DNA of 64,000 bases from Phallusia mammillata (taxonomy: Eukaryota): assembly GCA_965637545.1 (NCBI GenBank), contig OZ281497.1, positions 24,118,001-24,182,000 of the forward strand. Reading direction: 5' to 3'. This document shows positions 1 through 43,128 of the stretch, piece by piece. How positions within the stretch are numbered: position 1 is the first letter of the stretch; each line of letters begins with the position of its first letter. The position numbers and the translations under genes are program-made. The notes under the pieces were generated by a model. It worked only from the letters and a program-made list of their open reading frames with translations. It did no database searches and was not told the origin of the DNA.

Positions 1-3000
1 TTCTCCAGTTTCGGATGGAACTTCAGCTCTTGCGTTGTTTACTGGCCATGGGTTTCTCCTGTAACGTTCCCTGTTGGCACTGCAAAGTAAAAAAATAACT
101 GTAACCTTGAATGAACCCTAAACTTAAAAGTGCATGAACTACATTTGTTTGCATTACACAGGCAGGAGCTTGGCCGAACGGTCTGGCGCGCCTGACCCAT
201 ACACAGACATAAACAACCCTGATCGGGATTCGTCCCCGGGAGAGTCCTGGGTTCGAACCCCGTAAAAAAATGAAAAAAGGTGGTTAAACGTAATATCGGA
301 TTTGGTTATTCAATATATTCTACAAATCATTGTTTTTGACCCTTTGGCAACCTTTTTAAATAAGTCACTGGTTCTCATATCCTGGTTTTTAGCATATTTA
401 ATTATGCTAACGCTAATCATTTTAGCATCCCAGCACCCCTTACATTGGTTCCTCGGCAAATTGTGGGATGGAGTGAACTTGAGGTGTTAAGTTGAAGACT
501 GGTACCGGGTCTGTGCTATTGGGTGCTCTATTCGCCCTGCAAATACAAAACATGTGTGAAATAGAAATTTGTAAAGCCATACATCTCACCCAAATTGTTT
601 GTACAAGTTGTATTAAAAATTGTGTTGGTTGCAATGCAATTTCACAAATCCTAAATGAGAGTTTCTAACTTTTGTCTTTACGCTCTTAAGCCAACGATGA
701 CAATGTCGACTGCAAAGGCGCGCAAAATTTCCATCATTGGTTACTGAGTTAGGGACATGAAAAGTTACAAAATGTGACAAAAAACTCCCTTTCGGCCGAA
801 AATCACGTTTTGTAGCGGGCTATAGAGAAGTCCAATTGGCCTCTAAATGTGCACATGCGTTAAAGTTGATTATATCAGTTATCCTAATCTTGCTGTGCGT
901 ACGGTCAGCAGTTCTTATTCCTTAAACGTGCAAATTTTTGGAGCACCAGATAGCAGCAGGTGCATTTCTGGTTTAAGCAAAGTTCTTCAGAACATCTGGC
1001 CTAGTTTAACTACAACGTAATCACCCAACTGTTTTCGTTGTTGGTTACCATTCCTTTTAGCAAAGTTTGCTTTTTTACTTTCTTCTCTTCCGGCAAAGCA
1101 CAACGATTACGATCACAAGAACAATGAGAAGGATTTCTCCCACGGAACATGAGATTGCAATTATCAACGTCTGGTCATCTATTAAAGTTGAAACGTTCGT
1201 TAGTGATTACAATTGATAAATTTAAGGAAAAAGGCACAATCTGAATAGAACAGGGCAATGTCATTTCAATACCAAGGACAAGTCGCAGACACATGACACG
1301 TAAATTTGAAAAAGTTTTGTATTATTAGTATTTTTTACTGCTTACTAGTTTGAGGAGCCTTTACAGTGGTCTCTGGAACATAAGAAAATAAATGTTATTT
1401 TAGAGCAGGCAACCGCAGTCGGCAACCGCAGATCCGCGGCCCACTGCGACGAGTTCGTTACCATGCTGTATAATTTTTCGGGTTAAATGCTTTAAAACAT
1501 TTTGCCCATATATCACAGGATAATAAACTAATAAAATTTCACTTTCAAAAGCGGTCCGCAGAGCAAAAAAGGTTGCCACACCTTGTTTTAGAAAAACCGC
1601 GTTTATTGATGATTTTTCTGTTTTTCCATTTTTTTGCTAAGTTTGTCTCAAAAACGATTTTGCTACGTTTCATTGGATAGACGTTGATGTTGAAAGTGTT
1701 TTTTGACAACTGCTTTCAAAAAATTTCAGTTTACCACGTTTTTAAAATACAAACCAAATATAATATTGCTCGTTTCATTGGACTGCGTCTAATCCAGTGG
1801 TTCTTAACCGGTGGGAAATTTAATGTTTTCAGAGGGAAATTATGTAAGTCAGGTAACCAAACTTTTGGCCCAAGGGTCGAACCCGGCTTTGAATTAGTCG
1901 TTGAAAGTTACTTTCCTAAAATTTTTCCGCAACAACATGTTAGATTAATTTTTAACCTAGTTTTACAAGACGCCTAAAAATACAAGGCCGTTTGTTACAT
2001 CACATACATGTCTGATAGTATCAATGACTGTGCTATTGTGCGCGAATAAAGGCCTTTCCTTTGTTGATTGTGATGCAATAAATGACTATTGCAAGCAGAG
2101 GAAACTCTATAATATTCCATAAGCTTTATTCTCTCATAGAAACACTATTTAAACTGAATAAGATTGTAGTATATAACTTTGGGGTTCCAGACCAAATTGC
2201 TTCACCAAATTATTTCATTTAAAGAATATTTTTTTTGTTAACGGCACAAAACATCATTATAAAAATAACAAAGGGAAAAATTCAAACTTGGTGATTGACT
2301 TTAGTGGGAAACCACACCAAAGAGGTTAAGAACCACTGAGATAGACCTTGATACCGAAAGTGTTTTTTTTTCACAACTGTTTTTAAAAAATTTCAGTTTA
2401 CCACATGTTTCAAATACAAACCAAATATGATATTGCTCGGAATATAGAAAACGACTTTTTGTATTTTTAAACAAAATTGTATGAAATTTTTTTTAGTATG
2501 AATCCGTAATTACCTTTAAAGTCCGTGGTTGTCCCTGGAGTAGTAAATGTGTTTGGACGAATATTTCAAAAACATAGAGGAAAAACAATGATTGATATTC
2601 AATGATGTTTTTGCAACAACACTTATGGAATTATGTAAGACAGTTAACACATTGAAAGCCATTTCGTACCAAGACACAGTTTTTTTTAAAGTTTTTTTTG
2701 AGGTTTCGATTTTCAAATACGGTTTTGTTAATGTCAATCTTAACCCATATGTAAAAACAAACGATATAAGCAAGAAAAGGAAAAAAAAACGTTATGCAAA
2801 TCTGTTTTACCTTTAAGAGTTCTTTGGCAGATATATCTAGCACTTGATGGACATAACGATGCGCTTATCTCCAAATAACTAGTGGGAGATGATTTCGAAA
2901 TTTTGCTGCAATAGTCATTCCCAGTTCGAACATAAAACTCTTTTTCTGTAAGCACAAGTTTGTGGGTTTGAACAATACGATATGCACCAAAGTTGTAACA

Positions 3001-3865
3001 GTTAATAAACCTGTGTATCAGACAAACCCAGCCCACATCCGTTTTCTACAAAACATGAATTGCTCTCAAAGCTTTAATGTAAACAAAATAATAATAATAA
3101 CTCGGTTGGTTTAGAGTTGGATGAGGGTGGAACTTATGGGCCACAACTCGAAGGCGCAAGCCTGAAACCCGTGTAGTTTTGCAAAACCAAAACCATATCC
3201 AATTTGGCGGACACAACCTGTTCAACCACAATCAAAAAAGTAATTGTGGCAGAGTATGAGTTCAGACCCGGTAATTGAGAAACATTAAGCCGAAAATTAA
3301 ACCACAGGTTCGAATTCTGCAACTCCCAGATAATCTAAAAACCGTTTTTTAGTTGACCCACATTATTTTTCACCTAAATTTGAGGCTGGCACAAAATTTG
3401 ACAAACATAATTTTTTTAATAAATATTTGTTAGCCCGCATCAAAAATAACCTAATTTATGAAAACGAAACCGGAATTTATGAGAACAAAAAATTAACTAA
3501 ATTAGCTGAATAGGATTTGCGTTTACAAACTGGTAACAGTTTAAACTTTGAAAAATCTCATAGCTGCATAATTGCATTAATTTCACCAAACCGGAACCAG
3601 TAAATATTGGTTACTTACTGGAAGAAAAAAAAAGAAATGTTGATGGCTTTGGAAGAAACCCTTGAAGAAAGTGAAGAAGGCGATTTGATTGTACACTCGC
3701 TATCTTTGCATTTAGCTTTGAGCATTCTTTCTCAGCTTGATTATACGAATAGACTTTGTCGGACCCAATATAATACTCGTTTCCATCAAATGAATGCCAA
3801 GTTTGGGCGGAACATGAATGCCAAATTCCAACCACGAAAAGCATTAGGTGTATATTGTTTGCCAT
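1..3865 (-). CDS. C-type-lectin-like type I membrane protein, copy A (3' end runs off the window)
   Basis: Hand-spliced GT-AG exons: 3619-3865 (signal peptide + WHSFDGNEYY..AEKECSKLNAKIASV), 2811-2945 (FYVRTGNDYC..CPSSARYICQR), 1346-1372 (stalk ETTVKAPQT), 1079-1178 (TM, then CRKRR), 444-536, <1-79. Phases are consistent. The stalk exon at ~2514-2564 has lost its acceptor AG. Confidence 0.8.
162..272 (+). mobile_element. short tRNA-derived SINE
   Basis: A-box-like TGGCCGAACGG, B-box GGTTCGAACCC and an A-rich tail. Absent from the paralogous site near 11695. A near-identical inverted copy lies at 39085-39211. Confidence 0.7.
1406..1585. mobile_element. degenerate hAT-type MITE (also at ~12852-13031; related to 24244-24431)
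   Basis: GGCAACC...GGTTGCC termini, flanked by ttttagag/ttttagaa, and absent from the paralogous intron of copies C and D. Confidence 0.6.
1795..2338. mobile_element. hAT-type MITE (duplicate at ~13112-13655)
   Basis: Perfect 15-bp TIRs CAGTGGTTCTTAACC / GGTTAAGAACCACTG. Confidence 0.8.
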
Positions 3866-5400
3866 ATGTACAGTGTCGAATATTAAGCTGTAAAAAACGC
3901 ATAAATGCATAGGTGTTTCGACGAATATCAGCAACTACCTATAACTTGTTTTTCAAGTGGTTTGTGTAACAATCTTCAAGGAGTAGAGATTTTCGTTTTT
4001 GTGCTGATCCGAGCCGTCGCAGCTTTATGAACGTTTTTATCGTTAAGAGAGTTGTCAGCGGTCCTTAAGTTGCGTTCTGGACCCGAAAGTGCAAGCCAGA
4101 AACCCGACTCGCACTCGATTTAAAAAAATACAAAGTTGGAACTAGGCCTGAAATTTGGTAAAAATGCGGCTAAAATGCCGAATGTAAACACAGGTCCAAA
4201 TCAAGATCGTTTTATTACAACTTATGTCTGAACTCAACCCAAATGCGTAAATCCTGGCCCGACTTACAACTCTGCTTTATTTAAATTTGACAAGTTAGTT
4301 ATTTTAAGCATTTTGTTTCATCAAACAACATTTCTGTTATCCCCTTCGTACCATGCACCATCGACTAGTCTAAATAGCAAAGCTTCCCGTTCGTAAACAT
4401 AACTGAATTAAATATATTGATCTAAAGTAACGGTATCTCAGAATAAGCCCTTCAAGCGCAATACAAAAAACAACAACCTTGCAATCAAGTCCAAATCTTG
4501 TTTCGAATATAATTATTTTTTGTACATAAGATTTCAATAATTCTGTAAGAAAGTGCTAAACTAATTTTTATTTAAAACTCTTTCTGTGTTGCTAAGATGA
4601 GAAAAAATCTAAAATAAAGCCTAATTGCTTGGTCTCTACTTTACACACAATAAACGCTTACTTGCTCGTTTTCGACGCTAAAACAATAAACGGATAAAAC
4701 GTGTACATGGCGTAAATCATTTTATAGCGAAACTTTCTCGTTCCTGCCTTACCGAAAGCAATACCACAATAGGTGTGAACTTTTGTTGTTGCCAGTTTAT
4801 ATTAACCTGACATGAGGTCAATACACTAAATATATGTCGGACATGCGTCTTGCATTTTGTATGACTGGTAATTCTCTGTTCAAAAGCTTAGGGAACGTGA
4901 CAGGTAAATTTTTTATCAGTCACTGAGTATTAATTGCTTCTGAAGAGAATCTTATCTATTAGTTACAAAGCATGGCATTTCAGCCTGTAAGACCTAATAA
5001 CCTGAAGGTCCGTACCTTGGCTATTAGCCTGTTTATGCCCATTATATTGTTGCCAGCTGCACTGATATGACTGTACAGGTCGAAACACTGTGTCAAGTTT
5101 TCTGGTTCGCTGTGTGATCTATTTCACACAATGGCATCGAACCTCCACTACACTATCCTTATCAAACTCGGTGTATAGTTGCTTAACGACATCTTGTAAA
5201 TCTGTGACAATCTTTGGTAGATTTTCCCTGGCAGCCATATTTAGATGATGCCACACATCAGAAGTTTACTTAGAAACCCTCAGTGCTCATTAGAGAAGTA
5301 ATTACCTGGTGGACAGCTAATACAGGATTACATACCAACTGCACTTTATGCATAGCTTCAATAGCTCACAACACCAAACAGCAAATGTCTTGTCGCCAGC

Positions 5401-5446
5401 TGCACCAATAAGACCGTTTCGGTCGAAACGGTGGTCACTGTCTACA
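5401..5446 (+). ncRNA. degenerate type I hammerhead ribozyme motif (unit A)
   Basis: TGCA-CCAATAA-GACC..GGTC-GAAAC-GGTGGTCACT-GTC-TACA. The core is mutated; paralogous to 26491-26536. Confidence 0.45.
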
Positions 5447-5693
5447 ACCAACCTAATATTCTACTGAGGCGTTGCTTTTATTCTACGTTAATTGTTTCCA
5501 TATATTAGGCCTGCAACACGACGTATACGTAAAGTTTAAAAATTTAAACACTGTTTCAAAAACCAATTCACTTATCTATTGAGTTTTAGTGTTTTAGATA
5601 AGTTTTGAAACTTTCATTTATGTTCTCAAATATGTTCAATCAAAAGACCTAATCTGTTAAATTTTTAAATTAAGTTTTCTGGTATGCGATCAA

Positions 5694-7133
5694 TTAGTAT
5701 TGGATCAGTAAAACGGAGATTATGGTCATCAGTGTCGAAAGTACAATATTATCGATGAGTTTTCCAGCACCATAACGTAAGTTCATTTTCTTGGCGTAAT
5801 GTGCTGCCACCTAACGACAAAAACAATGAAGCTTTACGTGGTATCAACTATCAATGAGTATAAAACTTAAATTATCTTTTATAAAAAAAATCTCTTTTAT
5901 AAAAACCTGTGGGAATTTGTAACCATGAGCGATGACTTTCAAATGATTTAATACTGCGTTAACCAATTTTACAATGCGTGAGCCAAAGAACTTTTTTATA
6001 GAGAAAACACCATGCAGACGCGTCAGTAATCATTGAAGCAGGCTGTCCATCGAGCTATAGAACACGGTATATAAAGCACTTAAACGGTAAAAAAAAACGA
6101 TCAATGCCAGGTGTGGTAAGTGATGTCAGACGAAATTGGCGATTAGAAATGTTGCGTTGACAAACGATAAGAACCGGAGATGTTTGTCAGCTATATGACA
6201 GATGTAAGGGCATGGAAACTGTGTCAATGTTAAGCTTGGGGTCGTGCTTGTTAATAGAAAGCGATTCGACAAACAACAGTCTGATGCAGTCTTGGCTAAA
6301 GGGATTCGTATGCAAAATGTGTATGTTGGCCATTTACTTGGTTTTGGTCTCCCTAAATGAATATTAATGATTATCATTAAAACTTAAGGGAAAACTGTTT
6401 AAGTTTGGAGTGAATAAACAGATTTTGCATTTTGTAGTTGTATTTTAAGTCCTAAGAAACAGTGACACAACCGGTAAGATATGTATGAAATGTATGTTAA
6501 AGGTCAACAAACGCTTATGTACGACAAGGTGAAGTAATAATGTTTGTTTCATTTTGTTGCGACCATGAGGTTCACGAATTAAATCCCGTCGTAACTGCTT
6601 TGTCAAACTTAAAAATTTGTTGTTCACCTTTCAAGCAAATAAACTTTAGGTTAAGACTGTGACTGAAACAGACAGAAACCTAGAAATACAAACTGAGCCA
6701 CAGCAAAGTCTAAACCAAAAGATTGTGGACACGTGATAAGAAGCACACCACCGCCACTGGTCGGCAGACAATTGAGATTCGAACCCACGACTGGAAAGGC
6801 TCAGTTGTGGGTTCGAATCTCACCGCGGGCTGGATTTTTCTACTCTACTCCTTGCCGCAAGGGAATGGTTGGCAGATAGGCTTGTATAGGTACAACCCCA
6901 TCAATAGGCCTGACGTACTTTGAATGCTAGGCTTTACAAAATGACCTAATTTTTAATCTAGTATATTGTATACTACACAATACAATTTATAGTATACCTG
7001 TAGACCAGTCCCATCCCACAGCCCAATTGTGTTTGCATGTGTAATCATCCTTGCAATTGTTAAACCAAGCTTCACAGGCATCAAGTGACAATGGAACGTT
7101 ACGATACCGTTCAGTTCTGTACGAATTCGTTTT
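5694..7133 (-). pseudogene. orphan folate-receptor-like exons 3 and 5 (unit A)
   Basis: Exon 6998-7133 reads KTNSYRTERYRNVPLSLDACEAWFNNCKDDYTCKHNWAVGWDWSTG. GPI-tail exon 5694-5810 reads VAAHYAKKMNLRY.. Exons 1, 2 and 4 are absent. Confidence 0.85.
6790..6920 (+). mobile_element. 5'-rearranged tRNA-derived SINE (same family as 18210-18345, 27208-27340, 41797-41960 and the 33-34 kb array)
   Basis: B-box GGTTCGAATC followed by the shared body ..ctagatttttctactct..cttgccgcaagggaatg..ggcctgacgtact. Confidence 0.7.
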
Positions 7134-8475
7134 CTAGACGAAATCCACTCAGTGTTAGAATAATTTATTGTTTCTCAACTTTGTTAGGTTTCAAACTGTT
7201 TTGGGCTTTTGTTAATCATTTGTGGATTCGATAAAAGTATGAGTTAAATTGAACATTATTCAGTTGAAATCTACTTTTTGTTTGGTGCTTCAAGAAATTT
7301 GGTTTCAATGTTTTATTCATTATTATTGTTATGATGTAAGTCAAAGTATACGACATAACCAAAGGAGTTGAAAGGGTTGATCATGTCCAAAACGCATTTC
7401 CCTAATCCCCAATCCAAAAGATAAGACATCCCATATGTGCAGATGTCTGAAATCGAAAGCACTTTGTCAACTTTATTTTTTATCCAAGACTTACTTCAAA
7501 GATAGTTGCGCAATTTAAATAAAAATTTAGTAAAAATCTGTAGGCTACAATATATATTCCTGGTTTCACTACTCTCGATGCTTGGTTGCAAAAAAATTAT
7601 GTGGAAGTTACGTTTACATAATGTAGATCTTTTCTTGTCACTTTGAGAAAATTTCTCCCGAAAATAGCATCTGAGTGGCATCTTTGTTTGTCATTGTTCC
7701 AAAAATTTGTTAGTTTCCATGACTCAACTGTTCATAAATCAAAAATGTTTCGAAACTGTTTTGTACATAAGAGTCTATTCAAAAGGTTGCCAATCGTGGA
7801 AGGTTAACTGTTGATCAGCCACTGTGGGTAGGAGTTTTGCTTGCTTTTTGAAGCAATTGTCTATGTCGAAGTACTTGAATGTTTGGCTGAAAATTAAAAG
7901 ATTTGCCTAAAATCCTTGACAGACTTTCCAACAAAAACTTAATCTTAGTTCTTATTAGGTATAAGTCTGCTTTCAAACCACTGATCAAAACTGCTTAATA
8001 ATTATTTTCTGCATGGTTTGGCGGACCAACGATCTGTGCTTTTACTAATACAAAAGTATGTGGTAACTAACAAAACCTTACTGTTAATTTTTTTGTTCAA
8101 ACAAATTCAAAATTCAAAACGTAATATTCGACACAGAAATTGTTTATTCACAGGTTTTGAAGAACTGCAATTAATACAACAATACATTAATTAACTGTAT
8201 TTTACAATACCAATGAAACAATAGGAAAAGTGCAAACACTAGAACAGTTTCAAAGGCCAAGTGGCCGAGTCACAAAGCACATCTTCGCTATTGACACGTT
8301 TTTAACATAAAAAAATACATAAAAAGTACATAAAAAACGCAATGAAAAATCCGATCCAACGGAAAATCCTAACGGCGGAGTCATTGTGAGCATAACAGTT
8401 TAAGCATTTCCCGCCTAACCAGGATAAAAATAAACAAACAAAATGTTCAGAAATCTTATAGTGTTTTAGTAGAAT

Positions 8476-10003
8476 TTAAAAACTCTTTCTTGGTATGGGG
8501 GCGGGTGGGCGATCATATTGGCAAATTTCATAAGGATTAGGTCTTGTTTCGTGGCTAGTTTTCATTGGAATTTCATACACCGACTCTTCAACTGCATTCG
8601 GCTTGGTCTGATTTCTATCTGTGGCTTTGTTTGGTTGTTTGTTGGACCTGCCAATGCAAAAAAAACTCTTTGAGAATTTTTTTTGAAACTGAAAACTGAA
8701 TATTCTTTACAAAACATTGTATGAGCTGCATCTCATGACTGCGAAATCGTATCGGGTTCTGAAAAGTCGATATGGAAACGTTGGTTAAACAGCAACGGTG
8801 CAATTGTTTATTTAAAGTAAAACTTCAGGCCAGGGCTTTATATTCACCATAAAGTATATTCAAAATGAATCAACGCATTTTGCAGGCAATTCCCCACCAA
8901 AATAATAAAAATAAAAACAACAACACAATAGTTCGTTGTAGATTTTGGTTGAAGTTTGCTAGTTTACCTTTTCCTGTCCCAGTAAAACACAGCAATAAGG
9001 ACAACAAGAACCAGAAAGAAAAATCCTGCCACGGCGCTTGGAACTGCAACTGTTACCAATCGGTATTCATTTGCTAAAACCAAGTGTGGTAATGTTAGCT
9101 AGTAATAGATAATCATTAAATGTGCCATGTGTGAACGTCTTAAACTTACAGCATTTAATACAGTGCCGTTGGTATTATTTTTTATAAACCTGTAGGATTT
9201 TAAAGTAGACTATAGGATATTTTAGGCGTGCTACCAACATCAATCCTGCTATTGTTTCAGTCGAAATTTTTCCTCCATAAAAAGATTCATTCAAAGAGTG
9301 ACGTTGACTGATAAATAGCAGTCGAAGTTAGCTGTAAACAATGCACCATAATACTAACAATATGGCTACAGCAAGTTGATTATTGCTTTCATCACGTAAA
9401 TAAATGAATTGAATTGAATTGAATTGAATTTGTACTCAAATTGTTTAAACGATTACTGTTACCTACTTGCTTTGCTGGTAGTTGGATTGTTATGAGTTGA
9501 AACGAATCTTGTTTCCATTATTTGGTTTGTAGCTTCTGTGGTTTCTATAGAATAACAAGCAAAGTCGATCTTTACAGGTACACAAAAACTGAGTGCCTAA
9601 AATAGTGATTGTTTATAAAAAAATGTCTTTTTTAAACGGTTTTGTATTGAAAACTAACAAAATCTATATCAGAAAAATATACACGAAGCAAACATTGGAT
9701 ATTTTTCGCAAAAACTTGTTTAAATTTTTTGCTATAAAAAACATTGCTATAAAATCCACGCACATCATTATTTAATTGTGGTAGTTTCATTGTTGTTTTG
9801 CTATTACGTCAAGCAATATGAATGTCAAACTAAATAAAACATTTCTGTTTACCATAAAAGTCGTCGTTGTTGTCTCCGGGTTCATCATCAAACCCGTTGT
9901 TTTCAAACCCTGACCCAGAATAACCATATCCTAGCCCAGAGTAATAAACAGCCACAGATGTGGAAATATGCGAAATTAAAACAACACAAATAGCCAACTT
10001 CAT
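8476..10003 (-). CDS. small single-pass membrane protein (Ser-Gly/acidic ectodomain, mucin stalk, Tyr-motif tail), copy 1, ~168 aa
   Basis: Exons 9853-10003 (MKLAICVVLISHISTSVA-VYYSGLGYGYSGSGFENNGFDDEPGDNNDDFY), 9467-9544, 8968-9073 (TM VAVPSAVAGFFFLVLVVLIAVFYW) and 8476-8647 (EESVYEIP..YDRPPAPIP). All are GT-AG and the frame is open. Confidence 0.8.
9405..9430 (+). repeat. (TGAAT)n microsatellite
   Basis: Five tandem TGAAT units. Confidence 0.9.
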
Positions 10004-17118: not shown

Positions 17119-18345
17119 CTAACGACAAAAACAATGAAGCTTTACGTGGTATCAACTATCAATGAGTATAAAACTTAAATTATCTTTTATAAAAAAATTC
17201 TCTTTTATAAAAACCTGTGGGAATTTGTAACCATGAGCGATGACTTTCAAATGATTTAATACTGCGTTAACCAATTTTACAATGCGTGAGCCAAAGAACT
17301 TTTTTATAGAGAAAACACCATGCAGACGCGTCAGTAATCATTGAAGCAGGCTGTCCATCGAGCTATAGAACACGGTATATAAAGCACTTAAACGGTAAAA
17401 AAAACGATCAATGCCAGGTGTGCTAAGTGATGTCAGACGAAATTGGCGATTAGAAATGTTGCGTTGACAAACGATAAGAACCGGAGATGTTTGTCAGCTA
17501 TATGACAGATGTAAGGGCATGGAAACTGTGTCAATGTTAAGCTTGGGGTCGTGCTTGTTAATAGAAAGCGATTCGACAAACAACAGTCTGATGCAGTCTT
17601 GGCTAAAGGGACTCGTATGCAAAATGTGTATGTTGGCCATTTACTTGGTTTTGGTCTCCCTAAATGAATATTAATGATTATCATTAAAACTTAAGGGAAA
17701 ACTGTTTAAGTTTGGAGTGAATAAACAGATTTTGCATTTTGTAGTTGTATTTTAAGTCCTAAGAAACAGTGACACAACCGGTAAGATATGTATGAAATGT
17801 ATGTTAAAGGTCAACAAACGCTTATGTACGACAAGGTGAAGTAATAATGTTTGTTTCATTTTGTTGCGACCATGAGGTTCACGAATTAAATCCCGTCGTA
17901 ACTGCTTTGTCAAACTTAAAAATTTGTTGTTCACCTTTCAAGCAAATAAACTTTAGGTTAAGACTGTGACTGAAACAGACAGAAACCTAGAAATACAAAC
18001 TGAGCCACAGCAAAGTCTAAACCAAAAGATTGCGGACACGTGTTAAGAAGCACACCACCGCCACTAGTCGGCAGACAATTGTTTATCCATCACCAACCTA
18101 ACAAAAATGTGCAGTTAATCAGAAGAAATAAACACAAAACGACGACATGGTCAGGAAATCCACAACGTTTGATATTTTTTCTAAACAAGATAAACAGGCA
18201 GCTTTACAGTCTATGTAGCTCGATAGAGCGCGAGTCCCGGAAAGGCTCCTGTCGTGGGTTCGAATCTGACTGCAGGCTAGATTTTTCTACTCTACGCCTT
18301 GCCGCAAGGGAATGCTTGGAAGATAGGCTTGTATAGGTTCAACCC

Positions 18346-26804: not shown

Positions 26805-27548
26805 TCAATAGTATTGCAACAGTGCAACGGAGACTATGGCCACCAGTGTCGTAACTACAATATTGTCGATGAGTTTTCAAGCTCCACAACGCAAGTTCAT
26901 TTCCTGGGCGTAATGTGCTGCCACCTAACAACAACGAAAATGACGGTTTACCTGGTATGAGTATAAAAACTTAAACTAATCGGTGTTGGTAACTAGAAGC
27001 GATGATTATTAAGTTAGATAAATTTATAATGCGTCAAACCAGTGGTTCTCAACCTGTCATGGACCGCGCCCCCCTTCAAAAAATAACTTTTGGACTTCGT
27101 GCCCCCTTCAAGTAACCCTGTAGGACATGTAGCCCCCTTAAAAATGTGAATGGCAGTCTCATGTTGAATATCAATACTTATTTCGACTTTAAACAGGTCG
27201 AATAGAATGGCTCCTGTCGTGGGTTCGAATCTCACCGCGGGCTAGATTTTTCTACTCTATTTTTTCTACCCTTGTCGCAAGGGAATGCTTGGCAGATAGG
27301 CTTGTATAGGTACAACCCCAGCAATAGGCCTGACGTACTTTGAATGCTAGGCTTTACAAATTGACTTAATTTTTAATCTAGTATATTGTATACTGTACAA
27401 TATACAATTCATAGAATACCTGTAGACCAGTCCCATCCCACAGCCCAATTGTGTTTGCATGTGTAATCATCTCGTTAAACTATGCTTCACAGGTATCAAG
27501 TGACAATGAAACGTTACGATACCGTTCAGTTCTGTACGAATTCGGATT
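26805..27548 (-). pseudogene. orphan folate-receptor-like exons 3 (disrupted) and 5 (unit C)
   Basis: The exon-3 homolog at ~27420-27548 has an in-frame TAG and a small deletion. The exon-5 homolog starts at 26924. Confidence 0.85.
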
Positions 27549-29539
27549 CTAGATAAAATCCACTCAGTGTTAGAATAATTTATTGTTTCTCAACTTTGTT
27601 AGGTTTCAAACTGTTTTTGGCTTTTATTAATAATTTGTGGATTCGATAAAAATATGAGCTTAATTGAACATTATTCAGTTGAAATCTACTTTTTGTTTGG
27701 TGCTTCAAGAAATTTGGTTTCAATGTTTTGATCATTATTATTGTTATGATGTAAGTCAAAGTATACGAAATAACCAAAGGAGTTGAAAGAATTGATCACG
27801 TCCAAAACGCAATTCCTTAATCTCCAATCCCAAAGATAATACATCCTATATGTGCAGATGTGTGAAATCGAAAGCACAAAATCTGTCAACTTTAGTTTTT
27901 ATCCAATAACTTACTTCAAAGATAAAACCTGATAGTTACGCAATGTACAACAAAGTTGTAATTGAAAACAGAAAACTACACTGAACATTTTCGTCAACAA
28001 GATTGTCAACCGTGCGTCTGCGGACTCAAAAATCCATGAAATTATTTCGTAACACAGTCTACTAATTATTCATTTAAAACCAACAATAAAAGATGCGCTT
28101 TCAAAGAATAGCAAATCTGTATTTTAGTGTTTTTTTATACTTAATCCTGTAGTGAACCGGTTTATATCCTACAACCCCCCAAAATCGGTGTAGTTTCCGG
28201 CTTGGTGATTTTTTTTCTCGACAAGTGAAATAAACTCAACTCAACTCAAATACACGTGGTTAGTTCAAATAATTTTGCATTTTTAGTTAAAAATTTGGTA
28301 AAAATCTATAGGCTACAAAGGTTGCAAAAAATATTCTTGGTTTCACTATTCTCGATGCTTGGTTACAATAAGCTGATGTGGAAGTTTCGTTTACATCATG
28401 TAGATCTTTTCTTGTCAATTTGAGAAAATTTCTACCAAAAATAGCATCTCAGTGGCAGCTTTGTTTTTCATTGTTCCAAAATAATTGCTAGTTTCCATGA
28501 CTCTACTGTTCATAAATCAAAAATGTTTTGAAACTGTTTCTTGTATTGTGTATAAGAGTCTATTCAAATGGTTTGAAATCGTGAACGGTCAACTACCCGT
28601 CAGTCACTGTGTGTATGACTTTTGCTTGTTTTTTTAAGCAATTGTCACAATATAATTTAAGTCGTCTAGTCTGTTGTAAGTGATATACTGAACGTAGTAC
28701 ATTTTGATTTAAAATATTCGCATTTAGTTGTTTGAGGGTTTTTGGTACTTATATGCGCAATAACTTTGTGAAAAAAATTCTTCCCACCTAATTCCCTTAC
28801 TTCAATAAAGACATGTTTAAATAGGTTTGATGCTTATAATATTGTGATTTTTTGTCCTTGCCACCTTTATATCAGTTGTTTTATATAAGGTGGTCGGTTT
28901 GATCCTAAATGGTAACTTAGGACAGACTTATGAGAAGATCGTTTATCGAATTAAGTAAATGTTTGACTGGAAATTAAAAAATGGTTTAATCCTTGACTCA
29001 CCCACGGACAAAACCTTGATCTGAATTCTTTAAAGTCTGTATTCAAACTAATAAAAAAAATTTTTTAAAAGTATTATTTGTCTTAGATTTTTTATTCACA
29101 GGTTTGAAAAGCTGCAATTAATACAACAATACATTCATTAACTGTTATTTATAACAACAATAAAACGATAGGGAATGTGCAAACACTATAACAGTTTCAA
29201 AGGTCAAGTGGCCCAGTCACAAAGAATATCTTCCTTGTTGTCACAGGGTTTTGGGTTCTAATACAATTTCTGTCATTCATGTTTCCCTACGCAAAAGCTT
29301 ACGACGCTCCTACAAAGCAAAGAAACTTGAGGCATAAACTGCATTATTCCCCCTAACTCGAAACAATACATAAAAAAACATTAATGCTATATAAAAAAAT
29401 ATATGTAAAAACGATCCAACGGAAAAGCTACGGACTCATTGTGAACATAACGATTCAAGCGTTGCATGCCCAACGAAGACAAAAATAAATAAACAAACAA
29501 ACATAATGTTCAGAAATCTTATAGTAGAATTTAAAACCT

Positions 29540-32614: not shown

Positions 32615-32727
32615 TTTGGTTCAGTACGCAATAGGCAACAACTACTTTCTAGAAAAATATGGCAACTACGTTCAACGTTAAGATGAACATAAATTCATAA
32701 CTGGGATCAACCCTGAAGCGTCTATGC

Positions 32728-33181
32728 CAGTGGTTCTCAACCTTTTTTACTATGCGACCCCCTTTAGAGATTTTCTAACACCACGCGACCCCTTTACACA
32801 CGCACACACACAGGAAGTTTAACTACCAGCATGTGTTGATTGTGTTCATCACACATTTGCAATCTAACGTGGCTGCAATAGTTCGGCGTTTTGCTGTATT
32901 CCGGAAAACGCCTATTTTTCACTAACTATTTCACTATTTCGTGTTTTTCTTATGTTAAAAAAAACCAAAACCCGCAGTTATAGAAGTATACAATCGCAAA
33001 TATTGTTGCGCCCGTTCTAAATCAAACGGTCGTGTGAGTTACTATATGCTAAACAAAAGTCACAGGGAAAGTTTTTTTGATACAGATAAAACAATTCCGT
33101 GTTCGGTTGCGTCTCCGCGACCCCCTCAAAAGTGCTTGGCGACCCCTTGGGGGGTCGCGACCCCCAGGTTGAGAAACACTG
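32728..33181. mobile_element. hAT-type MITE nested in the tRNA-repeat insertion
   Basis: TIRs CAGTGGTTCTCAACCT / AGGTTGAGAAACACTG and a perfect TSD GTCTATGC. Confidence 0.92.
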
Positions 33182-33541
33182 GTCTATGCAGACCAGCGAT
33201 CACGGCACACTCATATATAAATCACAGTACACCAGGCCCATTGAAGGCGCTATACCGAATCAGCCGGTCACCAAGCATTCACCACCATATGGCAAGGCGT
33301 AGGCTAGAGAAATCTAGCTTGCGGTGGGATTCGAACCCACGACAGGAGTCTTTCCGGGACTCGCGATCTACAAACTGAGCTACACAGGCCCTACGCTTCA
33401 GGGCTGATACCAGTTATGAATTTATGTTCATCTTAACTGATACTGGTCAATCTGGCGATCCCCTACTACGAAGCTGACATGTGCAGCATACGAGGCAGGC
33501 AACGGTGCTTGTGATTCGACTTTCGGCGGATTCTCCACTGG

Positions 33542-33615
33542 GCCTGTGTAGCTCAGTTGGTAGAGCGCGAGTCCCGGAAAGACTCCTGTCGTGGGTTCGA
33601 ATCCCACCGCAGGCT
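33542..33615 (+). ncRNA. tRNA-like cloverleaf module of the repeat (also ~33897, ~34243, and inverted ~33316-33388); not a canonical tRNA
   Basis: Acceptor GCCTGTG/CGCAGGC, D arm GCTC-AGTTGGTA-GAGC, stem GAGTC/GACTC with loop CCGGAAA, T arm GTGGG-TTCGAAT-CCCAC. It lacks U33 and has an extra nt before the anticodon stem. Confidence 0.75.
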
Positions 33616-35696
33616 AGATTTCTCTAGCCTACGCCTTGCCATATGGTGGTGAATGCTTGGTGACCGGCTGATTCGGTATAGCGCCTTCAATGGGCCTGGC
33701 GTACTGTGATTTAGATATGAGTGTGCCGTGATCGCTGGTCTGCATAGACGCTTCAGGGTTGATCCCAGTTATGAATTTATGTTCATCTTAACTGATACTG
33801 GTCAATCTGGCGATCCCCTACTACGAAGCTGACATGTGCAGCATACGAGGCAGGCAACCGTGCTTGTGATTCGACTTTCGGCGGATTCTCCACTGGGCCT
33901 GTGTAGCTCAGTTGGTAGAGCGCGAGTCCCGGAAAGACTCCTGTCGAATCCCACCGCAGGCTAGATTTTTCTAGCCTACGCCTTGCCATATGGTGGTGAA
34001 TGCTTGGTGACCGGCTGATTCGGTATAGCGCCTTCAATGGGCCTGGCGTACTGTGATTTATATATGAGTGTGCCGTGATCGCTGGTCTGCATAGACGCTT
34101 CAGGGTTGATCCCAGTTATGAATTTATGTTCATCTTAACTGATACTGGTCAATCTGGCGATCCCTACTACGAAGCTGACATGTGCAGCATACGAGGCAGG
34201 CAACGGTGCTTGTGATTCGACTTTCGGCGGATTCTCCACTGGGCCTGTGTAGCTCAGTTGGTAGAGCGCGAGTCCCGGAAAGACTCCTGTCGTGGGTTCG
34301 AATCCCACCGCAGGCTAGATTTCTCTAGCCTACGCCTTGCCATATGGTGGTGAATGCTTGGTGACCGGCTGATTCGGTATAGCGCCTTCAATGGGCCTGG
34401 CGTACTGTGATCGACGTTCAACGTTGTTGTAAACAATTGTTGTCGACCTGTTTCAACAATGCGTGCGGACTGAACAAAAAATCTGCAAAATGTTTTCGTT
34501 TTGGCTGTCTAGTAAGGATAATACAAAGCCCGCAAAAGGGTATGAAACACTGTACAGAAGTCAAAAATGCGCTATAAAACTATAACTAATCTATATTTTC
34601 AAACTTCAAAATGAAATCAAAACCTTTCAAACGGTGTAGCTGCAGCGTGTTTAGGAATTATCCCCAATTCTACCAGTAACTGTTTTTGCACACCATAAGA
34701 TTTCAACTTTGCGCAGCTGTTTCTAGGTGATGGTTCAGTGCAATTTTGTAGCTATGTGTTCTTTCGCCAAGGCTATGAACAATATGCTTTGTTTTTCTAT
34801 GCTTGACGCTTACAAAAAATGCTTATACGTTTCATAACGTAAAACTTTCCATATTAACTGTGTGAAAATTGCTTTTTCCGGCTTTACTGAAAGCGACAAC
34901 TTCTAACTATATCATCCATGCAACAATATTAGCCAGTTTTCATCACCCAATAAGGCTGCATGGTTTGTGTGCTCACAGTTTACCGAAACCATTCCTATGA
35001 CTCGAGTCAATTCATGTAGTTTCGAAACTTGACAGGTTAATTGTTCATTACACACTGTGTATGATTTTTTGTATGTTTTGAAAGGAAGTCTTAAACTAGG
35101 TTTAGTACATCCTACCAACCACATAAATATTTTAATATCACAGTAAAACTGCCAGTGAAACGGTCAATTTTGTCTATTATGTTATTTATTGCAAATTTAA
35201 ATTAGGCGTATGTGTAAAAAAATCAAGGTCTTGTAGGTTGCATAAGAATATCACTGACTTTTAGCGCTTGTAAAAAGTGGTTGTGGTTTCTAAATCCGGC
35301 TCAGCCTCTTCTGTTAATAGAAATAGAAAGACTCATTGTTGAACCCTAGTATTGTTTCTTTTTTTCTTTTCACACTACAAAAAACGATTATAACAAAAAC
35401 AAAAATAAAACATTTAACATACAAAATGTATGATTAACATCTATATAATTATTGCGTCGCACTAGCACTCATGGAAGTGTAAGGGCCCATACGAAGCCAA
35501 AGACTGACGAGTATTCCCATTTGAAAAACAATAGGCAACTACAAGAAGACTCCATTGTGGCTTTAATTGAAAAATATTGCTGCTCATTGTCATATGATTT
35601 CATTTTTTTGACAAATTTAGAGTTCACAAGAAGGCTAGTTTCTTTTATCAGCACTTTTTTCTCTTCAGTTAGGCGCCTTGGATCAATAGACTGCAA

Positions 35697-39211: not shown

Positions 39212-42200
39212 CAACCGGACATTGTTCTAGTCTAAGGTTTTTCAAACTTCACACCATGCGCCATCAACCTGTTTAAATACTTAAGCTTCGCGTTCGCTAG
39301 GTAACTGAATTAAATGTAAGTAACGGTGATTCAGGTTCATGAGCCCTTCAAGCACAATTGAAACTGCTTCTATGTTGCAAAGATAAGAAAAAATCCAAAA
39401 TCAGTGCAAAACTCGCTCGGTCTCTGCTTTACACACAATAAACGCTTACTTGCTTATTTTCGACGCCAACAATAAACGGAAATAACGTGTACATGGCGCA
39501 AATCAATTCAAAGTGAACTTTCTTGTTCCTGCTTTACCGAAAGCAATACAACAATAGGTTTAATCTTTTGCTGTTGTCTGCTTATATCAATCTGATACAA
39601 TAGATTAAAAATAAATGCATTTTGCATGACTGGTCAATTGTCTATTCAAGAGCTTATGAAACCTGACAGGTTAATTTTTTACTGTGTAGGATTCGCTTTT
39701 GAAGAGAATTTTATCTATAGTTTGTGAAGCATGGTGTTTCAGCCTGTAAGACCCAACAAACTGAATGTCTGTAGCTTGGCTATTAGCCTGTTTATGCCCA
39801 TTTTTGCAAGCTACACTGATATGACTGTACAGGCCGAAACACTGTACAAGTTTTCTGGTTTGCTGTGTGATCTATTTAACAATATTGCATCATGCCCGGT
39901 TACATTAGCCTAAAGAGCAAATGTCTAGTTGTCACCGGCTGCCCTGATAAGACAATATAGGTCGAAACAGTCTGTTTACCAATCAACTTATTATTATCCT
40001 GGACTGTTGCTTTTATTCTACATTAACTGTTTTTAAATATTAAACATGTAACACGATGGCTACAGTTCAACTTTCTACATACATGTATTGTGTCCGGTTT
40101 TAAAGCAAATAAACAACAAAATTTAAGCAGTATTCTAAAAACCAATTTAGTAATCATTGCAAGTGTTTGTAAGAATTAATACATTCTCAAGTTTTTTGAA
40201 ACAGGTAAAGGGTTTTAAAAATACTAAATCAAAACACTTATTTATCTGCTACAATTTCTTTTAATTAAGTTTTTATTTATGCAATTAATTAGTATTGGAA
40301 CAGAGCAATGGAGATTATGGCTATCAGTGTCGTAAGCACAATATTGTCGATAAGTTTTCCAGCTCCACAGCGCAAGTTCATTTCCTTGGCGTAATGTGCT
40401 GCCACCTAACGACAAAACAATGAAGGTTTACGTGGTATCAATGAGAATCAAAGCTTTTTCTTTTTTAAAAACTGATCGGTACCTGTAACCAGCAGCAATA
40501 CCTTTTAAATGATTTAATAATGCGTTAAACAATTTTATAATGCGTATAAACCAGAGAACTTCTGTATAAAGAATACATTGTGCAGACGTTTCAACGTCTC
40601 TGTTGTCACCATCAAAGTAGGTCGATCGACTCGAGCACGGTATAGAACACGGTATATAAAGTACTTATGAAAAAAGGGGAATGCAATGTATGTGAAGTGA
40701 TACCGAAGACAATAGCACGGAACTGGCGATTTGTTCAAGACCAACTGTCTATTGTATTAGTTGTCTTGGTCTTTCCTGATTCTTTAATGTATAGGCCTGC
40801 CAATTAAACTTTCGGGCCTTAACGGAGCTTTTGAATACAAAGCGATTCGAGGAACAACAGTCTTATGTGGTCTTACAGAGACTCGTACGTAAAATGTGTA
40901 TGTTGGTAATTACTTTGTATTTAAAAGTTGTACTCTAAGAAACAGTGTCACAACCAGGTACGATATGCATCAAATGTATGTTAAAGGTCAGCAAACGCTT
41001 GTGTACGGTAATGCGACAAGGTGAAGCAACGTTGATTGTTTTTTATCCTCGCTTGAAATAACATTTTACTTGATTTTTTTTACTTAGGTAGTTATACACG
41101 CGACCGAGATAGAATTAGAACCGTAACCTTGTGAACAAAAGGTGGTTGCGCTAACCACTCGGTATACATATATGTCTTGTGTGACATGGTAAGGCAATTT
41201 AATTACCATGGTTACTTACCGCATCATTAGGGTTGACATCACCTTCGAACCAGAAAACCATCGCAGGTTCTCCAACTGGTACAACCTCATCTGGATAAAG
41301 TTGCTCACACGTTTCTGTGACCGAGGCGAAAACCTCACTAAACTTGCGACATGTTTTGTCTGCTGGACAAACGTTCGTCCCAATGATTAGTAAAACAGAC
41401 ATAAGTTAGTTTTTCTGCTATTAACATGTATGGATGGATTGGCATAACGGTTAGTGTAGTGGGCTTGCAGCCACGAGGTTCGAATCCCGTCGTAAGCGAT
41501 TCGTCAAACCTAAGAAATGTTGTTCATCTTTCAAGCAATAAACGTTGGGTCAAAACTGTGGCCAAAACAGACAGAAACCTAGAAATAAAACTGAGCCACA
41601 CCAAAGTCTGAACCAAAAGATTGCGGACACGGGTTAAGATGCAGCAACGCAACTGGTCGGCAGACAATTGTTTATTCATCACCAGTCTAACTTAAAATGT
41701 GCAGTTAATCAGAAGTAATAAACACAAAACAACGAGATGGTCAGGAAATCCACAACATTTGATATTTTTTCTAAACAAGAGAAGCAGGCAGCTTTACAGC
41801 CTGTGTAGCTCGATAGAGCGCGAGTCTTGGAAAGCCTACTGTCGTGGGTTCGAATCTCACCGCAGGCTAGATTTTTCTACTCTACGCCTTGCCGCATGGG
41901 AATGCTTGGCAAATCGGCTTGTGTAGGAACAACGTCTTCAATAGGCCTGATGTACTATGAATGATAAGCTGTACAAATTGACATATTTTTTAGTCTATAG
42001 TATGTTGTATAGTATACCTGTTGACCAGTCCCATCCCACAGCCCAGTTTTGTAGACATGTGTAGTCGTCCTCACAATCGTTAAACCAAGCTTCACAGGCA
42101 TCAAGTGACAATGGAACGTTACGATACCGTTCAGTTCTGTATGAATTCGGTTTCTAGATAAAATCCACTCAGTGTTAGAATAATTTATTGTTTCTCAGCT

Positions 42201-43128
42201 TTGTTAGGTTTCAAACTGTTTTTGGCTTTTATTAATAATTTGTGGATTCGATATAAATATGAGCTAAAATCAATTTTTTTTTAATTGGGTTGTTATTATT
42301 TGCCTTTTTGACCAAATATCAAGTTTCGGCCAAATCTTTTTGGCGAGTGTGGTGCATCACTGCCAAACGCTTTTCACAAGTTTATTCCTTTTCACTCATT
42401 TAATAGGATTTACAACACAAGTACACTCAATAACTTACAGTAACCACTCACGGACCAACATTTGGCGAACACTCGTAGAAGCAGTCGTACTCTAGCAATC
42501 GTTCACGGCATTTTGCAGAGATTTAGTGATTAGGGCAGTGATTGTATCTGAAGCCATACAGAATATCTGGTCCATCTTGGTGTGAACCGTAAGCGGTGTA
42601 ATTTGTGCAACACGAACGAGCCTTCCACGGGGAGCACTGCAATCACAAAAGACGTAAATTACACAAAATTTTTACATTAGGCCTTACAACACGGTGTAGC
42701 TGCAGCGCGTTATAACATTATCCACCTATTGTGTTATTCACTGTTTTGCGCTCCATAGGGCAGCTATTTCCGGCTTGGTAATTTGTTTTAGTGCAATTGT
42801 GTCGCTATGTTTTCTATTGTCAAGCTAAGTAAACTAAATTTAACCTAACAAACTGTAATGTCGTCAGGTGGCTATCCATACGGCCTGTTACAGCTTATTT
42901 GCCAGTAATTGCCAATTTCTATTGATTCCCACGTTTCCTCACTAGTCACTACAGCTTGTGTTGTAATCTATTGCGTTATGTGACGTAATAATCGACTGCC
43001 AGTTTTGTGTGATAACGCGACGTGGTTTAGTTCTTTTCGTTGCTGACTTCCGTGGAGCATGGTGCTGCGTCAGTTGTATTAGAAAAGTCGTTTATTGTCG
43101 TGTTGACGATTATTGGTGAGTCACTTTG

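What the first reader, a model, noticed from the sequence alone, without database searches (positions are those of the whole stretch)
32668..34425. Multimeric tRNA-headed retroelement with twin-priming inversion, implying a concatemeric or circular RNA template
Seen: nearly three near-identical 355-bp monomers, each with a full tRNA-like cloverleaf, are preceded by an inverted segment. Read on its own strand, that segment starts at the tRNA 5' end (GGGCCTGTGTAGC), reads through the monomer junction and ends with a 3-nt microhomology (GTT) to the left flank. The whole is bounded by a 12-bp TSD (ACGTTCAACGTT) and has no poly(A). The consensus monomer has no T4 run. Older dispersed single copies (6790, 27208, 41797) end near the same ..GTACT point. 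Known: TSD plus 5' inversion is the twin-priming signature of target-primed reverse transcription, and tandem plus inverted pseudo-LTRs typify Penelope-like elements and retrozymes. Inference: a Pol III read-through multimer, or rolling-circle reverse transcription of a ~355-nt circular RNA, was retroposed. This would be an unusual SINE/retrozyme-like class in which a tRNA fold might replace the ribozyme as the processing signal (RNase P/Z).
Basis: partly seen in the sequence, partly recalled or inferred. Interest (0 to 1): 0.85.

Follow-up and report, generated by a model that had tools for sequence, protein, structure and literature searches.

The report
tRNA-headed retroposon inserted Penelope-style
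This is one copy of a young, few-hundred-copy, non-coding jumping element of a sea-squirt genome that carries a tRNA-like gene and inserts as tandem units plus an inverted arm, the footprint of Penelope-like retrotransposons, so it is a ribozyme-free variant of a known kind, with no evidence for an RNA circle.

Summary
A 12-bp target-site duplication (32668-79 and 34414-25) brackets an inverted arm plus 2.9 direct 355-bp units, each with a tRNA-like cloverleaf. There is no poly(A), no T4 run and no known ribozyme. Two corrections apply. The inverted arm is split by a later 454-bp hAT-like MITE. The "older single copies" are pieces of a different ~0.8-kb repeat that shares only unit positions 1-170.

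The locus is not unique. The spacer-specific 25-mer occurs 335 times in the assembly. About 49 independent insertions were analysed. They show 6-12-bp duplications, variable 5' ends, 0.8-4 units and only two 3' ends (about 170 and about 250).

Of 16 two-armed insertions with canonical ends, 15 have one end of each type (P=2.6e-4). Partial tandems, an inverted 5'-truncated arm and a one-sided tail form the published Penelope-like (PLE) signature, not L1 twin priming. PLEs with intact reading frames are abundant here, and one PLE family shows its own 38-bp one-sided tail. No PLE sharing the element's 3' end was found.

Recurrent 5' ends at 328-333 point to linear RNA. RNase P/Z sites do not match the 3' ends, so the circle idea and the tRNA-as-processing-signal idea are unsupported. 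The scan had already found this family on other DNA (s1-355927, s1-375405).

The parts
32668..32679 (.). left copy of the 12-bp target-site duplication ACGTTCAACGTT
   Evidence: Exact word found only twice in the window; sequence read.
32680..32727 (-). outer part of the inverted arm (unit positions 252 down to 205); its outer end is the family's second canonical 3' end (the 'tail' end)
   Evidence: blastn 100% to unit 202-252. The same end at 249-254 recurs in at least 15 other loci.
32728..33181 (.). later insertion, not part of the element: 454-bp hAT-like MITE with terminal inverted repeats CAGTGGTTCTCAACC and an 8-bp duplication GTCTATGC (32720-27 and 33182-89)
   Evidence: The two halves of the arm overlap by exactly the 8-bp duplication (unit 202-209).
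33182..33391 (-). inner part of the inverted arm (unit 209 down to 1, plus one base matching position 355), with a tRNA-like gene at 33316-33389
   Evidence: blastn 97.6%; ARAGORN and Rfam tRNA, 37.7 bits.
33392..33392 (.). 1-nt filler at the inversion junction
33393..33540 (+). direct arm, 5'-truncated unit A (unit 208-355)
   Evidence: blastn 98%.
33541..33895 (+). direct unit B (1-355), used as the reference unit; tRNA-like gene at 33542-33615 with intact A box (TAGCTCAGTTGG) and B box (GGTTCGAATCC)
   Evidence: Rfam tRNA 55.3 bits.
33896..34241 (+). direct unit C (1-355, 96.6%), with a deletion of about 9 bp in the T arm; it lacks the locus-private variant 82C
   Evidence: (25.2 bits, below the gathering score).
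34242..34411 (+). direct unit D (1-170), ending at the main canonical 3' end; tRNA-like gene at 34243-34316
   Evidence: blastn 100% to unit B 1-170. The same end at 165-174 is seen in over 35 other arms.
34412..34413 (.). 2-nt filler (CG) between the element's 3' end and the duplication
34414..34425 (.). right copy of the 12-bp target-site duplication

Best explanation
The stretch is a single insertion of a young, non-coding retroposon family. The family is built from a 355-bp periodic unit: a tRNA-like head with Pol III A and B boxes (1-74), a body (75-170) and a spacer (171-355).

Proposed mechanism (inferred unless marked shown):
1. The unit has no terminator, so it is transcribed, probably by Pol III, into linear RNA that can span more than one unit. 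The RNA starts about 27 nt upstream of the tRNA-like +1, or at +1 itself.
2. The reverse transcriptase / GIY-YIG endonuclease of a Penelope-like element (PLE) uses this RNA in trans.
3. Both nicked strands of the target prime cDNA on element RNA, at two preferred sites about 80 nt apart (about 170 and about 250).
4. Each cDNA runs 5'-ward for a variable distance, across unit boundaries.
5. The two cDNAs are joined head to head.

The result is a direct arm of 0.8-4 units, often an inverted 5'-truncated arm, a 'tail' at only one end, and a 6-12-bp target duplication.

Shown: the anatomy, its family-wide regularity, the single-event origin, and the presence of intact PLEs with the same tail behaviour in this genome.
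For: 1. The duplication brackets the whole composite here and in at least 19 other independent loci, with lengths of 6-12 bp.
2. The spacer 25-mer has 335 genome-wide hits, mostly one per locus, and units are 96-99% alike.
3. There are only two 3' ends, 165-176 and 249-256, while 5' ends vary.
4. Of 22 two-armed insertions, 16 have canonical outer ends on both sides. Fifteen of those 16 pair one end near 170 with one near 250 (binomial P=2.6e-4). Only 4 of 25 single-armed copies end near 250.
5. The arms of one insertion share variants found nowhere else in the assembly. L023 150G occurs three times in the genome, all in that locus and including the inverted arm. The window's 82C is likewise confined to this locus.
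6. The literature defines PLE insertions by partial tandems, an adjacent inverted 5'-truncated copy and a 30-40-bp tail often at one end only (PMC8557442; PMC8969392).
7. The same genome holds at least 132 PLE RT/GIY-YIG matches, many with open frames of about 800 aa and many in head-to-head or tandem pairs. PLE family A ends with or without a shared 38-bp tail.
8. 5' ends recur at 328-333 in 5 of 68 arms (Poisson P=0.0065). Two of these are joins that look like a jump from one RNA's 5' end onto another RNA (L011, L004).
Against: - No autonomous partner was identified. The 3' UTRs of the two PLE families I could read (family A; the pair in L039) show no similarity to the unit, with scores at or below the shuffle mean.
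- The tail is about 80 bp rather than 30-40 bp.
- The unit has no hammerhead motif, which canonical PLEs and animal retrozymes carry.
- Six two-armed copies have non-canonical outer ends (at 355, 29, 86, 25, 284, 223).
- A 27-nt leader is long for a tRNA-type Pol III start.
- Transcription rests only on contigs from runs that are guessed, not recorded, as RNA.
- The sample is about 49 of roughly 250-300 loci. Half of them were chosen for holding a full unit.
Confidence: 0.65

Rival explanations
1. It is an ordinary tRNA-derived SINE mobilised by a LINE. The inverted arm arose by L1-type twin priming, and the multimer comes from Pol III read-through of a tandem master locus.
For: The unit has a tRNA-like head with intact A/B boxes. 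It shows variable-length duplications and 5' truncation. There is a 3-nt GTT/AAC overlap at the left junction. Six two-armed copies have non-canonical outer ends, as twin priming predicts.
Against: - There is no poly(A) or microsatellite tail.
- Sixteen of 22 inverted arms end at a canonical 3' end, and the two ends pair 170/250 in 15 of 16.
- The inverted arms copy the same 3'-proximal region as the direct arm, not the region upstream of it (for example L023, 83-251 against ...1-168).
- In this window the 208-252 overlap differs between the arms at positions 219 and 224.
- No long master array turned up among the best genome hits; the largest has about 4 units.
Confidence: 0.15
2. Unit-length RNA is released by RNase P/Z at the tRNA fold, circularised, and copied by rolling-circle reverse transcription, so the tRNA fold replaces the hammerhead of retrozymes.
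For: The units are seamless 355-bp repeats. All units and the inverted arm of one insertion can share assembly-unique variants (L023), as expected if one unit is copied repeatedly. A few arms begin at tRNA +1/-1 (this window's inverted arm, L003, L012, L029). Animal retrozymes of similar size do form circles (PMC7229834).
Against: - The 3' ends lie near 170 and 250, not at 355/1 or near 74.
- Discrete 5' ends at 328-333, with jump-like joins, imply linear RNA.
- Units within one insertion are not always identical in lineage variants: the window's unit C lacks 82C and unit A lacks 219T, and L027 is split 2+2.
- The fold is no more stable than shuffled sequence (z=-1.2).
- No junction test was possible with contigs.
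Confidence: 0.1
3. It is a DNA-level product: local tandem duplication and inversion, re-integration of extrachromosomal satellite DNA, or an assembly artefact.
For: Units B and D are identical over 1-170 while unit C carries a deletion. Some post-insertion unequal exchange or conversion in this particular array therefore cannot be excluded. The short contigs of the DNA run could not bridge the array.
Against: Dozens of unlinked loci repeat the same build, with their own duplications, constant 3' ends and variable 5' ends. That is the pattern of target-primed reverse transcription, not of DNA duplication or of a cut-and-paste element.
Confidence: 0.03

Closest known systems
Penelope-like elements (PLEs) and their non-autonomous derivatives (e.g. 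MRC1/Chlamys in Chlamydomonas; PMC8557442)
   Same: Both show 5' truncation, partial head-to-tail tandems (pseudo-LTR-like), an adjacent inverted 5'-truncated copy, an extension (tail) at one end only, and variable target duplications. PLEs with intact ORFs co-occur in the same genome.
   Different: This element has no ORF and no sequence similarity to the 3' ends of the two PLE families examined. Its tail is about 80 bp rather than 30-40 bp. It carries an internal tRNA-like Pol III promoter, and it has no hammerhead.
Metazoan non-LTR retrozymes (PMC7229834; bioRxiv 10.64898/2026.07.22.740005)
   Same: Both are small (150-400 bp) non-coding units found as short dispersed tandems, with duplications longer than 4 bp. 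Retrozymes are proposed to be non-autonomous PLE derivatives.
   Different: The defining type I hammerhead ribozyme is absent on both strands. No circular RNA has been shown. The unit carries a tRNA-like gene instead.
tRNA-derived SINEs mobilised by LINEs
   Same: Both have a tRNA-related module with A and B boxes, are non-coding, number in the hundreds of copies, and carry target duplications.
   Different: Most copies here begin upstream of the tRNA-like part. Copies are multi-unit or part-inverted. They lack an A-rich or microsatellite tail, have two alternative 3' ends, and no LINE-like 3' part was identified.
L1 twin priming (5' inversion)
   Same: Both give an inverted 5' segment inside one target duplication, with short overlap or filler at the junctions.
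   Different: In L1 the outer end of the inverted segment is an arbitrary internal site, and the segment lies upstream of the direct part in the RNA. Here the outer end is a canonical 3' end, and the two arms overlap in unit coordinates.
Small-RNA-gene-bearing non-SINE retroelements (Cassandra, Helenus, Ajax; PMC10886601)
   Same: Both are non-autonomous retroelements of a non-LINE class that carry a tRNA-like or 5S-like Pol III module.
   Different: Those are LTR-type elements with PBS/PPT and 4-5-bp duplications. This one shows TPRT-type, Penelope-style insertions.

Membership tests
Penelope-type (PLE-mobilised) insertion | 5'-truncated copies arranged as partial head-to-tail tandems | tested here: met
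   0.8-4 units in about 49 independent loci; the window has 2.9 units.
Penelope-type (PLE-mobilised) insertion | Inverted 5'-truncated copy adjacent to the 5' end, inside the same target duplication | tested here: met
   22 of about 49 loci are two-armed. The duplication brackets both arms (for example L015, L023, L029, L041, L044, L048), and the arms share assembly-unique variants.
Penelope-type (PLE-mobilised) insertion | Extension (tail) present at one end only | tested here: met
   15 of 16 two-armed copies pair an end near 170 with an end near 250 (P=2.6e-4). The length is about 80 bp against the published 30-40 bp.
Penelope-type (PLE-mobilised) insertion | Sequence shared with an autonomous PLE (3' end / pseudo-LTR) | tested here: inconclusive
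   No similarity to the two PLE families that could be read.
Penelope-type (PLE-mobilised) insertion | Autonomous PLE with RT and GIY-YIG present and apparently intact in the genome | tested here: met
   (open frames up to 845 aa).
Metazoan non-LTR retrozyme | Type I hammerhead ribozyme in every unit | tested here: not met
   No Rfam ribozyme at E<=10 on a dimer. No CUGANGA on either strand.
Metazoan non-LTR retrozyme | Unit-length circular RNA | not testable with these tools
   Only contigs were available. Every junction also exists in genomic tandems.
tRNA-derived SINE (LINE partner) | tRNA-related head with Pol III A and B boxes | tested here: met
   Rfam tRNA 55 bits; A and B boxes read directly from the sequence.
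tRNA-derived SINE (LINE partner) | Copies start at the head, and end in an A-rich or microsatellite tail or a LINE-derived 3' part | tested here: not met
   Most copies start in the spacer upstream of the head. The ends are GTGAT(TT) or CATCTTAA, with no tail.
L1-type twin priming | Outer end of the inverted segment at an arbitrary internal site, with the segment lying upstream of the direct part in the template | tested here: not met
   16 of 22 outer ends are canonical 3' ends, and the arms overlap in unit coordinates.

The most novel reading that the evidence does not exclude
The tRNA-like module has functionally replaced the hammerhead in a retrozyme-like life cycle. Host tRNA-processing enzymes would cut read-through RNA into unit-length pieces. 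These would be circularised or repeatedly re-used, and a Penelope reverse transcriptase would copy them round and round. That would explain why all units and the inverted arm of one insertion can share variants that exist nowhere else in the genome.
Probability: 0.08. Interest if true: 0.85.

Novelty: new variant of a known kind. Interest (0 to 1): 0.5.

Why it matters
How Penelope-like elements build their tandem/inverted insertions and one-sided tails is still undefined (PMC8557442). A 355-bp, high-identity, few-hundred-copy passenger shows these features at single-nucleotide resolution. It has two fixed priming ends 80 nt apart, almost always one of each per two-armed insertion, and the arms share assembly-unique variants. 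That makes it a compact natural substrate for working out the mechanism and for a trans-mobilisation assay.

It would also be, as far as my literature searches show, a Pol III/tRNA-headed element spread by a Penelope enzyme rather than by a LINE. This widens what counts as a SINE, and it shows that the hammerhead is not needed for this mode of spread.

For annotation, such copies are easily miscalled as satellites, tRNA pseudogene clusters or MITEs.

Tried and rejected
- **Ribozyme search.** Rfam at E<=1 over 3 kb and at E<=10 over a dimer found only tRNA. There is no CUGANGA core on either strand.
- **Viroid-like structure.** The unit's fold is no better than shuffles (z=-1.24). The 150-270 region, tested as a hairpin that might bring the two ends together, gave z=-0.6.
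- **Partner search.** blastn and Smith-Waterman of the unit against the 3' UTRs of PLE family A and the L039 PLE gave scores at or below the shuffle mean. The only hits were tRNA T-arm matches to genuine tRNA genes in L036/L039.
- **Larger census.** I did not try to obtain those letters by another tool. The census therefore rests on 39 fetched loci plus 10 read from the hit table.
- **RNA evidence.** No run is on record as RNA, and all runs are contigs. Starts, ends, strand and circular junctions could not be read. The contigs only show that family pieces, including spacer-to-tRNA bridges, occur in three small, probably transcriptomic data sets whose flanks are silent.
- **DNA transposon or Helitron reading.** Rejected because of variable duplication length, constant 3' ends and variable 5' ends.
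- **Two independent head-to-head insertions.** Rejected because one duplication brackets both arms and both arms share assembly-unique variants.
- **ADAR editing of one template.** All three locus-private changes in L023 (112, 150, 305) are A-to-G. Other loci show no such bias, so I do not rely on this.
Full report
**1. The observation**

- ACGTTCAACGTT occurs exactly twice in the 64-kb window, at 32668-79 and 34414-25.
- I took 33541-33895 as the reference unit (355 bp, position 1 = tRNA +1).
- The insert then reads: inverted arm = unit -1/1 to 252 on the minus strand (33391 down to 32680); one filler base; direct arm = 208-355, 1-355, 1-355 (96.6%, with a deletion of about 9 bp in the T arm), 1-170; two filler bases (CG); second copy of the duplication.
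- Three cloverleaves pass Rfam's tRNA threshold (55, 55 and 38 bits). The fourth is degraded (25 bits).
- The unit has no run of four T or four A.

Two corrections apply.

- The inverted arm is split by a 454-bp MITE (32728-33181), with terminal inverted repeats CAGTGGTTCTCAACC and an 8-bp duplication GTCTATGC. It inserted later.
- The 'older single copies' in the window are internal parts of a longer repeat of about 0.8 kb. Its copies stay homologous to each other for about 300 bp on both sides of the part resembling unit 1-170. The GTACT point is where two families stop sharing a module, not an insertion end.

**2. It is a family**

- The unit finds 143 high-scoring segments in the 240-Mb assembly.
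- A spacer-specific 25-mer (unit 255-279) has 335 hits at up to 3 mismatches, against 0 for the reversed control, mostly one per locus. That implies a few hundred insertions.
- I analysed 39 fetched independent loci plus 10 read from the table. Half of this sample was chosen for holding a complete unit, so unit number is biased upward there. The 20 loci taken from the 25-mer list are unbiased in that respect and mostly hold 0.8-1.4 units.
- Units are 96-99% identical to the reference.
- At least 19 loci besides the window's have clean target duplications of 6-12 bp that bracket the whole composite, inverted arm included.

**3. Regularities that decide the mechanism class**

(a) The 3' ends fall in only two places, 165-176 and 249-256, while 5' ends are scattered.

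(b) Twenty-two loci have an inverted 5' arm. In 16 of them the outer end of that arm is again one of the two canonical 3' ends. In 15 of these 16, one side ends near 170 and the other near 250 (binomial P=2.6e-4 at p=0.5). Among single-armed copies, only 4 of 25 end near 250. The window's copy is typical: 252 on the inverted side, 170 on the direct side.

(c) The arms overlap in unit coordinates. They both copy the 3'-proximal region, unlike L1 twin priming, where the inverted piece lies upstream of the direct piece.

(d) Variants private to a locus are shared by its units and its inverted arm.
- L023 150G occurs three times in the whole assembly, all in that insertion, one of them in the inverted arm.
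- The window's 82C exists only here, in units B and D and the inverted arm.
- 219T and L015's 86G turned out to be subfamily variants.

Each composite is therefore one event, made from templates of one source.

**4. Comparison with what is known**

The published description of Penelope-like element (PLE) insertions lists the following (PMC8557442; PMC8969392):
- strong 5' truncation;
- partial tandems forming pseudo-LTRs;
- often an inverted 5'-truncated copy at the 5' end;

The same papers say the underlying transposition steps are undefined. All four features are met here, with a longer tail of about 80 bp.

The genome carries many PLEs.
- GIY-YIG and RT-EN searches give at least 132 matches from 985 candidates, with open frames up to 845 aa and many head-to-head or tandem pairs.
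- In L039, a head-to-head PLE pair (arms 1404-3862 and 3934-6391) sits inside a genuine tRNA gene array.
- PLE family A has a defined 3' end. Two independent copies (L034, L035) carry the same 38-bp extension beyond it and two (L032, L037) do not. The tail phenomenon therefore operates in this genome.

Animal retrozymes are small tandem hammerhead units now argued to be non-autonomous PLE derivatives (PMC7229834; bioRxiv 10.64898/2026.07.22.740005). They are the nearest non-coding relatives. Their defining ribozyme is absent here.

My full-text searches found no PLE or retrozyme paper that describes a tRNA-like module in such elements. That is absence from the searched library only.

**5. What the template was**

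- Five of 68 arm 5' ends fall at 328-333, against 1.1 expected (P=0.0065).
- In L011 the copy reads 330-355, 1-39, then 329-355, 1-355, 1-172. In L004 it reads 123-168, then 328-355, and onward. Both look like a reverse transcriptase reaching an RNA 5' end at about 329 and jumping to a second RNA. In L004 it lands at about 168, the canonical 3' end.
- This argues for linear RNAs with a discrete 5' end about 27 nt upstream of tRNA +1. Some of these RNAs span more than one unit.
- A few arms start at +1/-1 (the window's inverted arm, L003, L012, L029). That would fit an RNase P-trimmed 5' end, but the numbers are small.
- The 3' ends coincide with neither RNase P nor RNase Z sites.
- Lineage variants are three times rarer in the tRNA-like part (3 of 38, against 8.1 expected, P=0.025). 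Two of those three (7C, 8T) make it more tRNA-like. This suggests selection on that module in source copies, most simply as the promoter.
- Sharing of assembly-unique variants by all units of an insertion fits repeated copying of one unit (a circle, or re-use by template jumping). It fits a multi-unit transcript of a lost or unassembled homogeneous source equally well.
- The mosaic state of the window's copy (unit C lacks 82C, unit A lacks 219T) and of L027 (2+2) speaks against a single homogeneous circle in those cases.
- The fold is not unusually stable.
- Reads gave only contigs. Three small, probably transcriptomic data sets from three studies hold family pieces, including 181-232-nt contigs bridging spacer and tRNA-like part, while the unique flanks are silent. 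Nothing can be said about ends or circles.
- A second organism label (run X18) also holds 46% of the sampled words.

**6. Mechanism proposed**

The steps below are inference. A multi-unit RNA, probably made by Pol III, is bound by a PLE RT-EN. One nicked target strand primes near 170. The other primes near 250, possibly on the 80-nt stretch of RNA left free downstream of the first priming site. Both cDNAs extend 5'-ward across unit boundaries and are joined. This yields the direct arm, the inverted arm, the one-sided tail and the target duplication.

The window's copy holds two intact tRNA-like heads and one degraded head in direct orientation and no terminator. It could itself serve as a source of multi-unit RNA.

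**7. What is missing**

The partner is not identified. A LINE partner therefore keeps about 15% in my estimate, and the circle model about 10%.

**8. Relation to earlier notes of this scan**

After I had formed the Penelope reading (stated), the findings index showed that the same family had been noted on other DNA of this genome and read the same way (s1-355927, s1-375405). It also showed that hammerhead retrozymes with Penelope-style insertions occur in the same sea-squirt genome.

What this report adds:
- the 170/250 pairing statistic;
- the test of variants that are unique in the assembly;
- the recurrent 5' end at 328-333;
- the in-genome PLE tail control.

Noticed in passing
window 32720-33189: A 454-bp hAT-like MITE (terminal inverted repeats CAGTGGTTCTCAACC, 8-bp duplication GTCTATGC) sits inside the inverted arm. 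Other copies of it lie inside long contigs (up to 7.2 kb) of the probable RNA runs.
   Followed up: partly
window 41483-42268, 17889-18343, 6582-7248, 27199-27815: An older repeat family of about 0.8 kb (83-91% between copies) contains an internal module 75-83% like unit 1-170 (tRNA-like part plus body) but has different flanking parts. The 1-170 module is therefore shared by at least two families, and its boundary equals the main 3' end.
   Followed up: partly
L039 (G000:C4:7516000-7525999) 1-1317 and 6508-9573: A genuine tandem array of tRNA genes (487-bp period, tRNA-Leu on + and tRNA-Met on -, at least 9 units) is interrupted by a head-to-head pair of Penelope-like elements (arms 1404-3862 and 3934-6391, 98-99% complementary).
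   Followed up: partly
L034 2094-2131 and L035 2093-2130: Two unlinked copies of PLE family A share a 38-bp extension beyond the canonical 3' end that two other copies lack. The extension and the 3' UTR contain a GGTG(A/G)ACGAAACG motif reminiscent of a minimal hammerhead core.
   Followed up: partly
L023 (G000:C5:6911205-6914559) 1156-2023: All three changes private to this insertion (unit 112, 150, 305) are A-to-G and are present in every unit and in the inverted arm. This could be chance, or editing of a single RNA template that was copied repeatedly.
   Followed up: partly
G000:C4:27432015-27434603: The longest copy seen (about 4 units plus an inverted arm) lies about 400 bp from a PLE RT-EN fragment on the opposite strand (27433971-27434603). 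It could not be fetched.
   Followed up: no
G000:C3:3.89-5.07 Mb: At least ten near-identical copies share the same insertion (204-355, 1-355, 1-250) and the same flanks. This indicates a segmentally duplicated region carrying one insertion, not ten events.
   Followed up: partly
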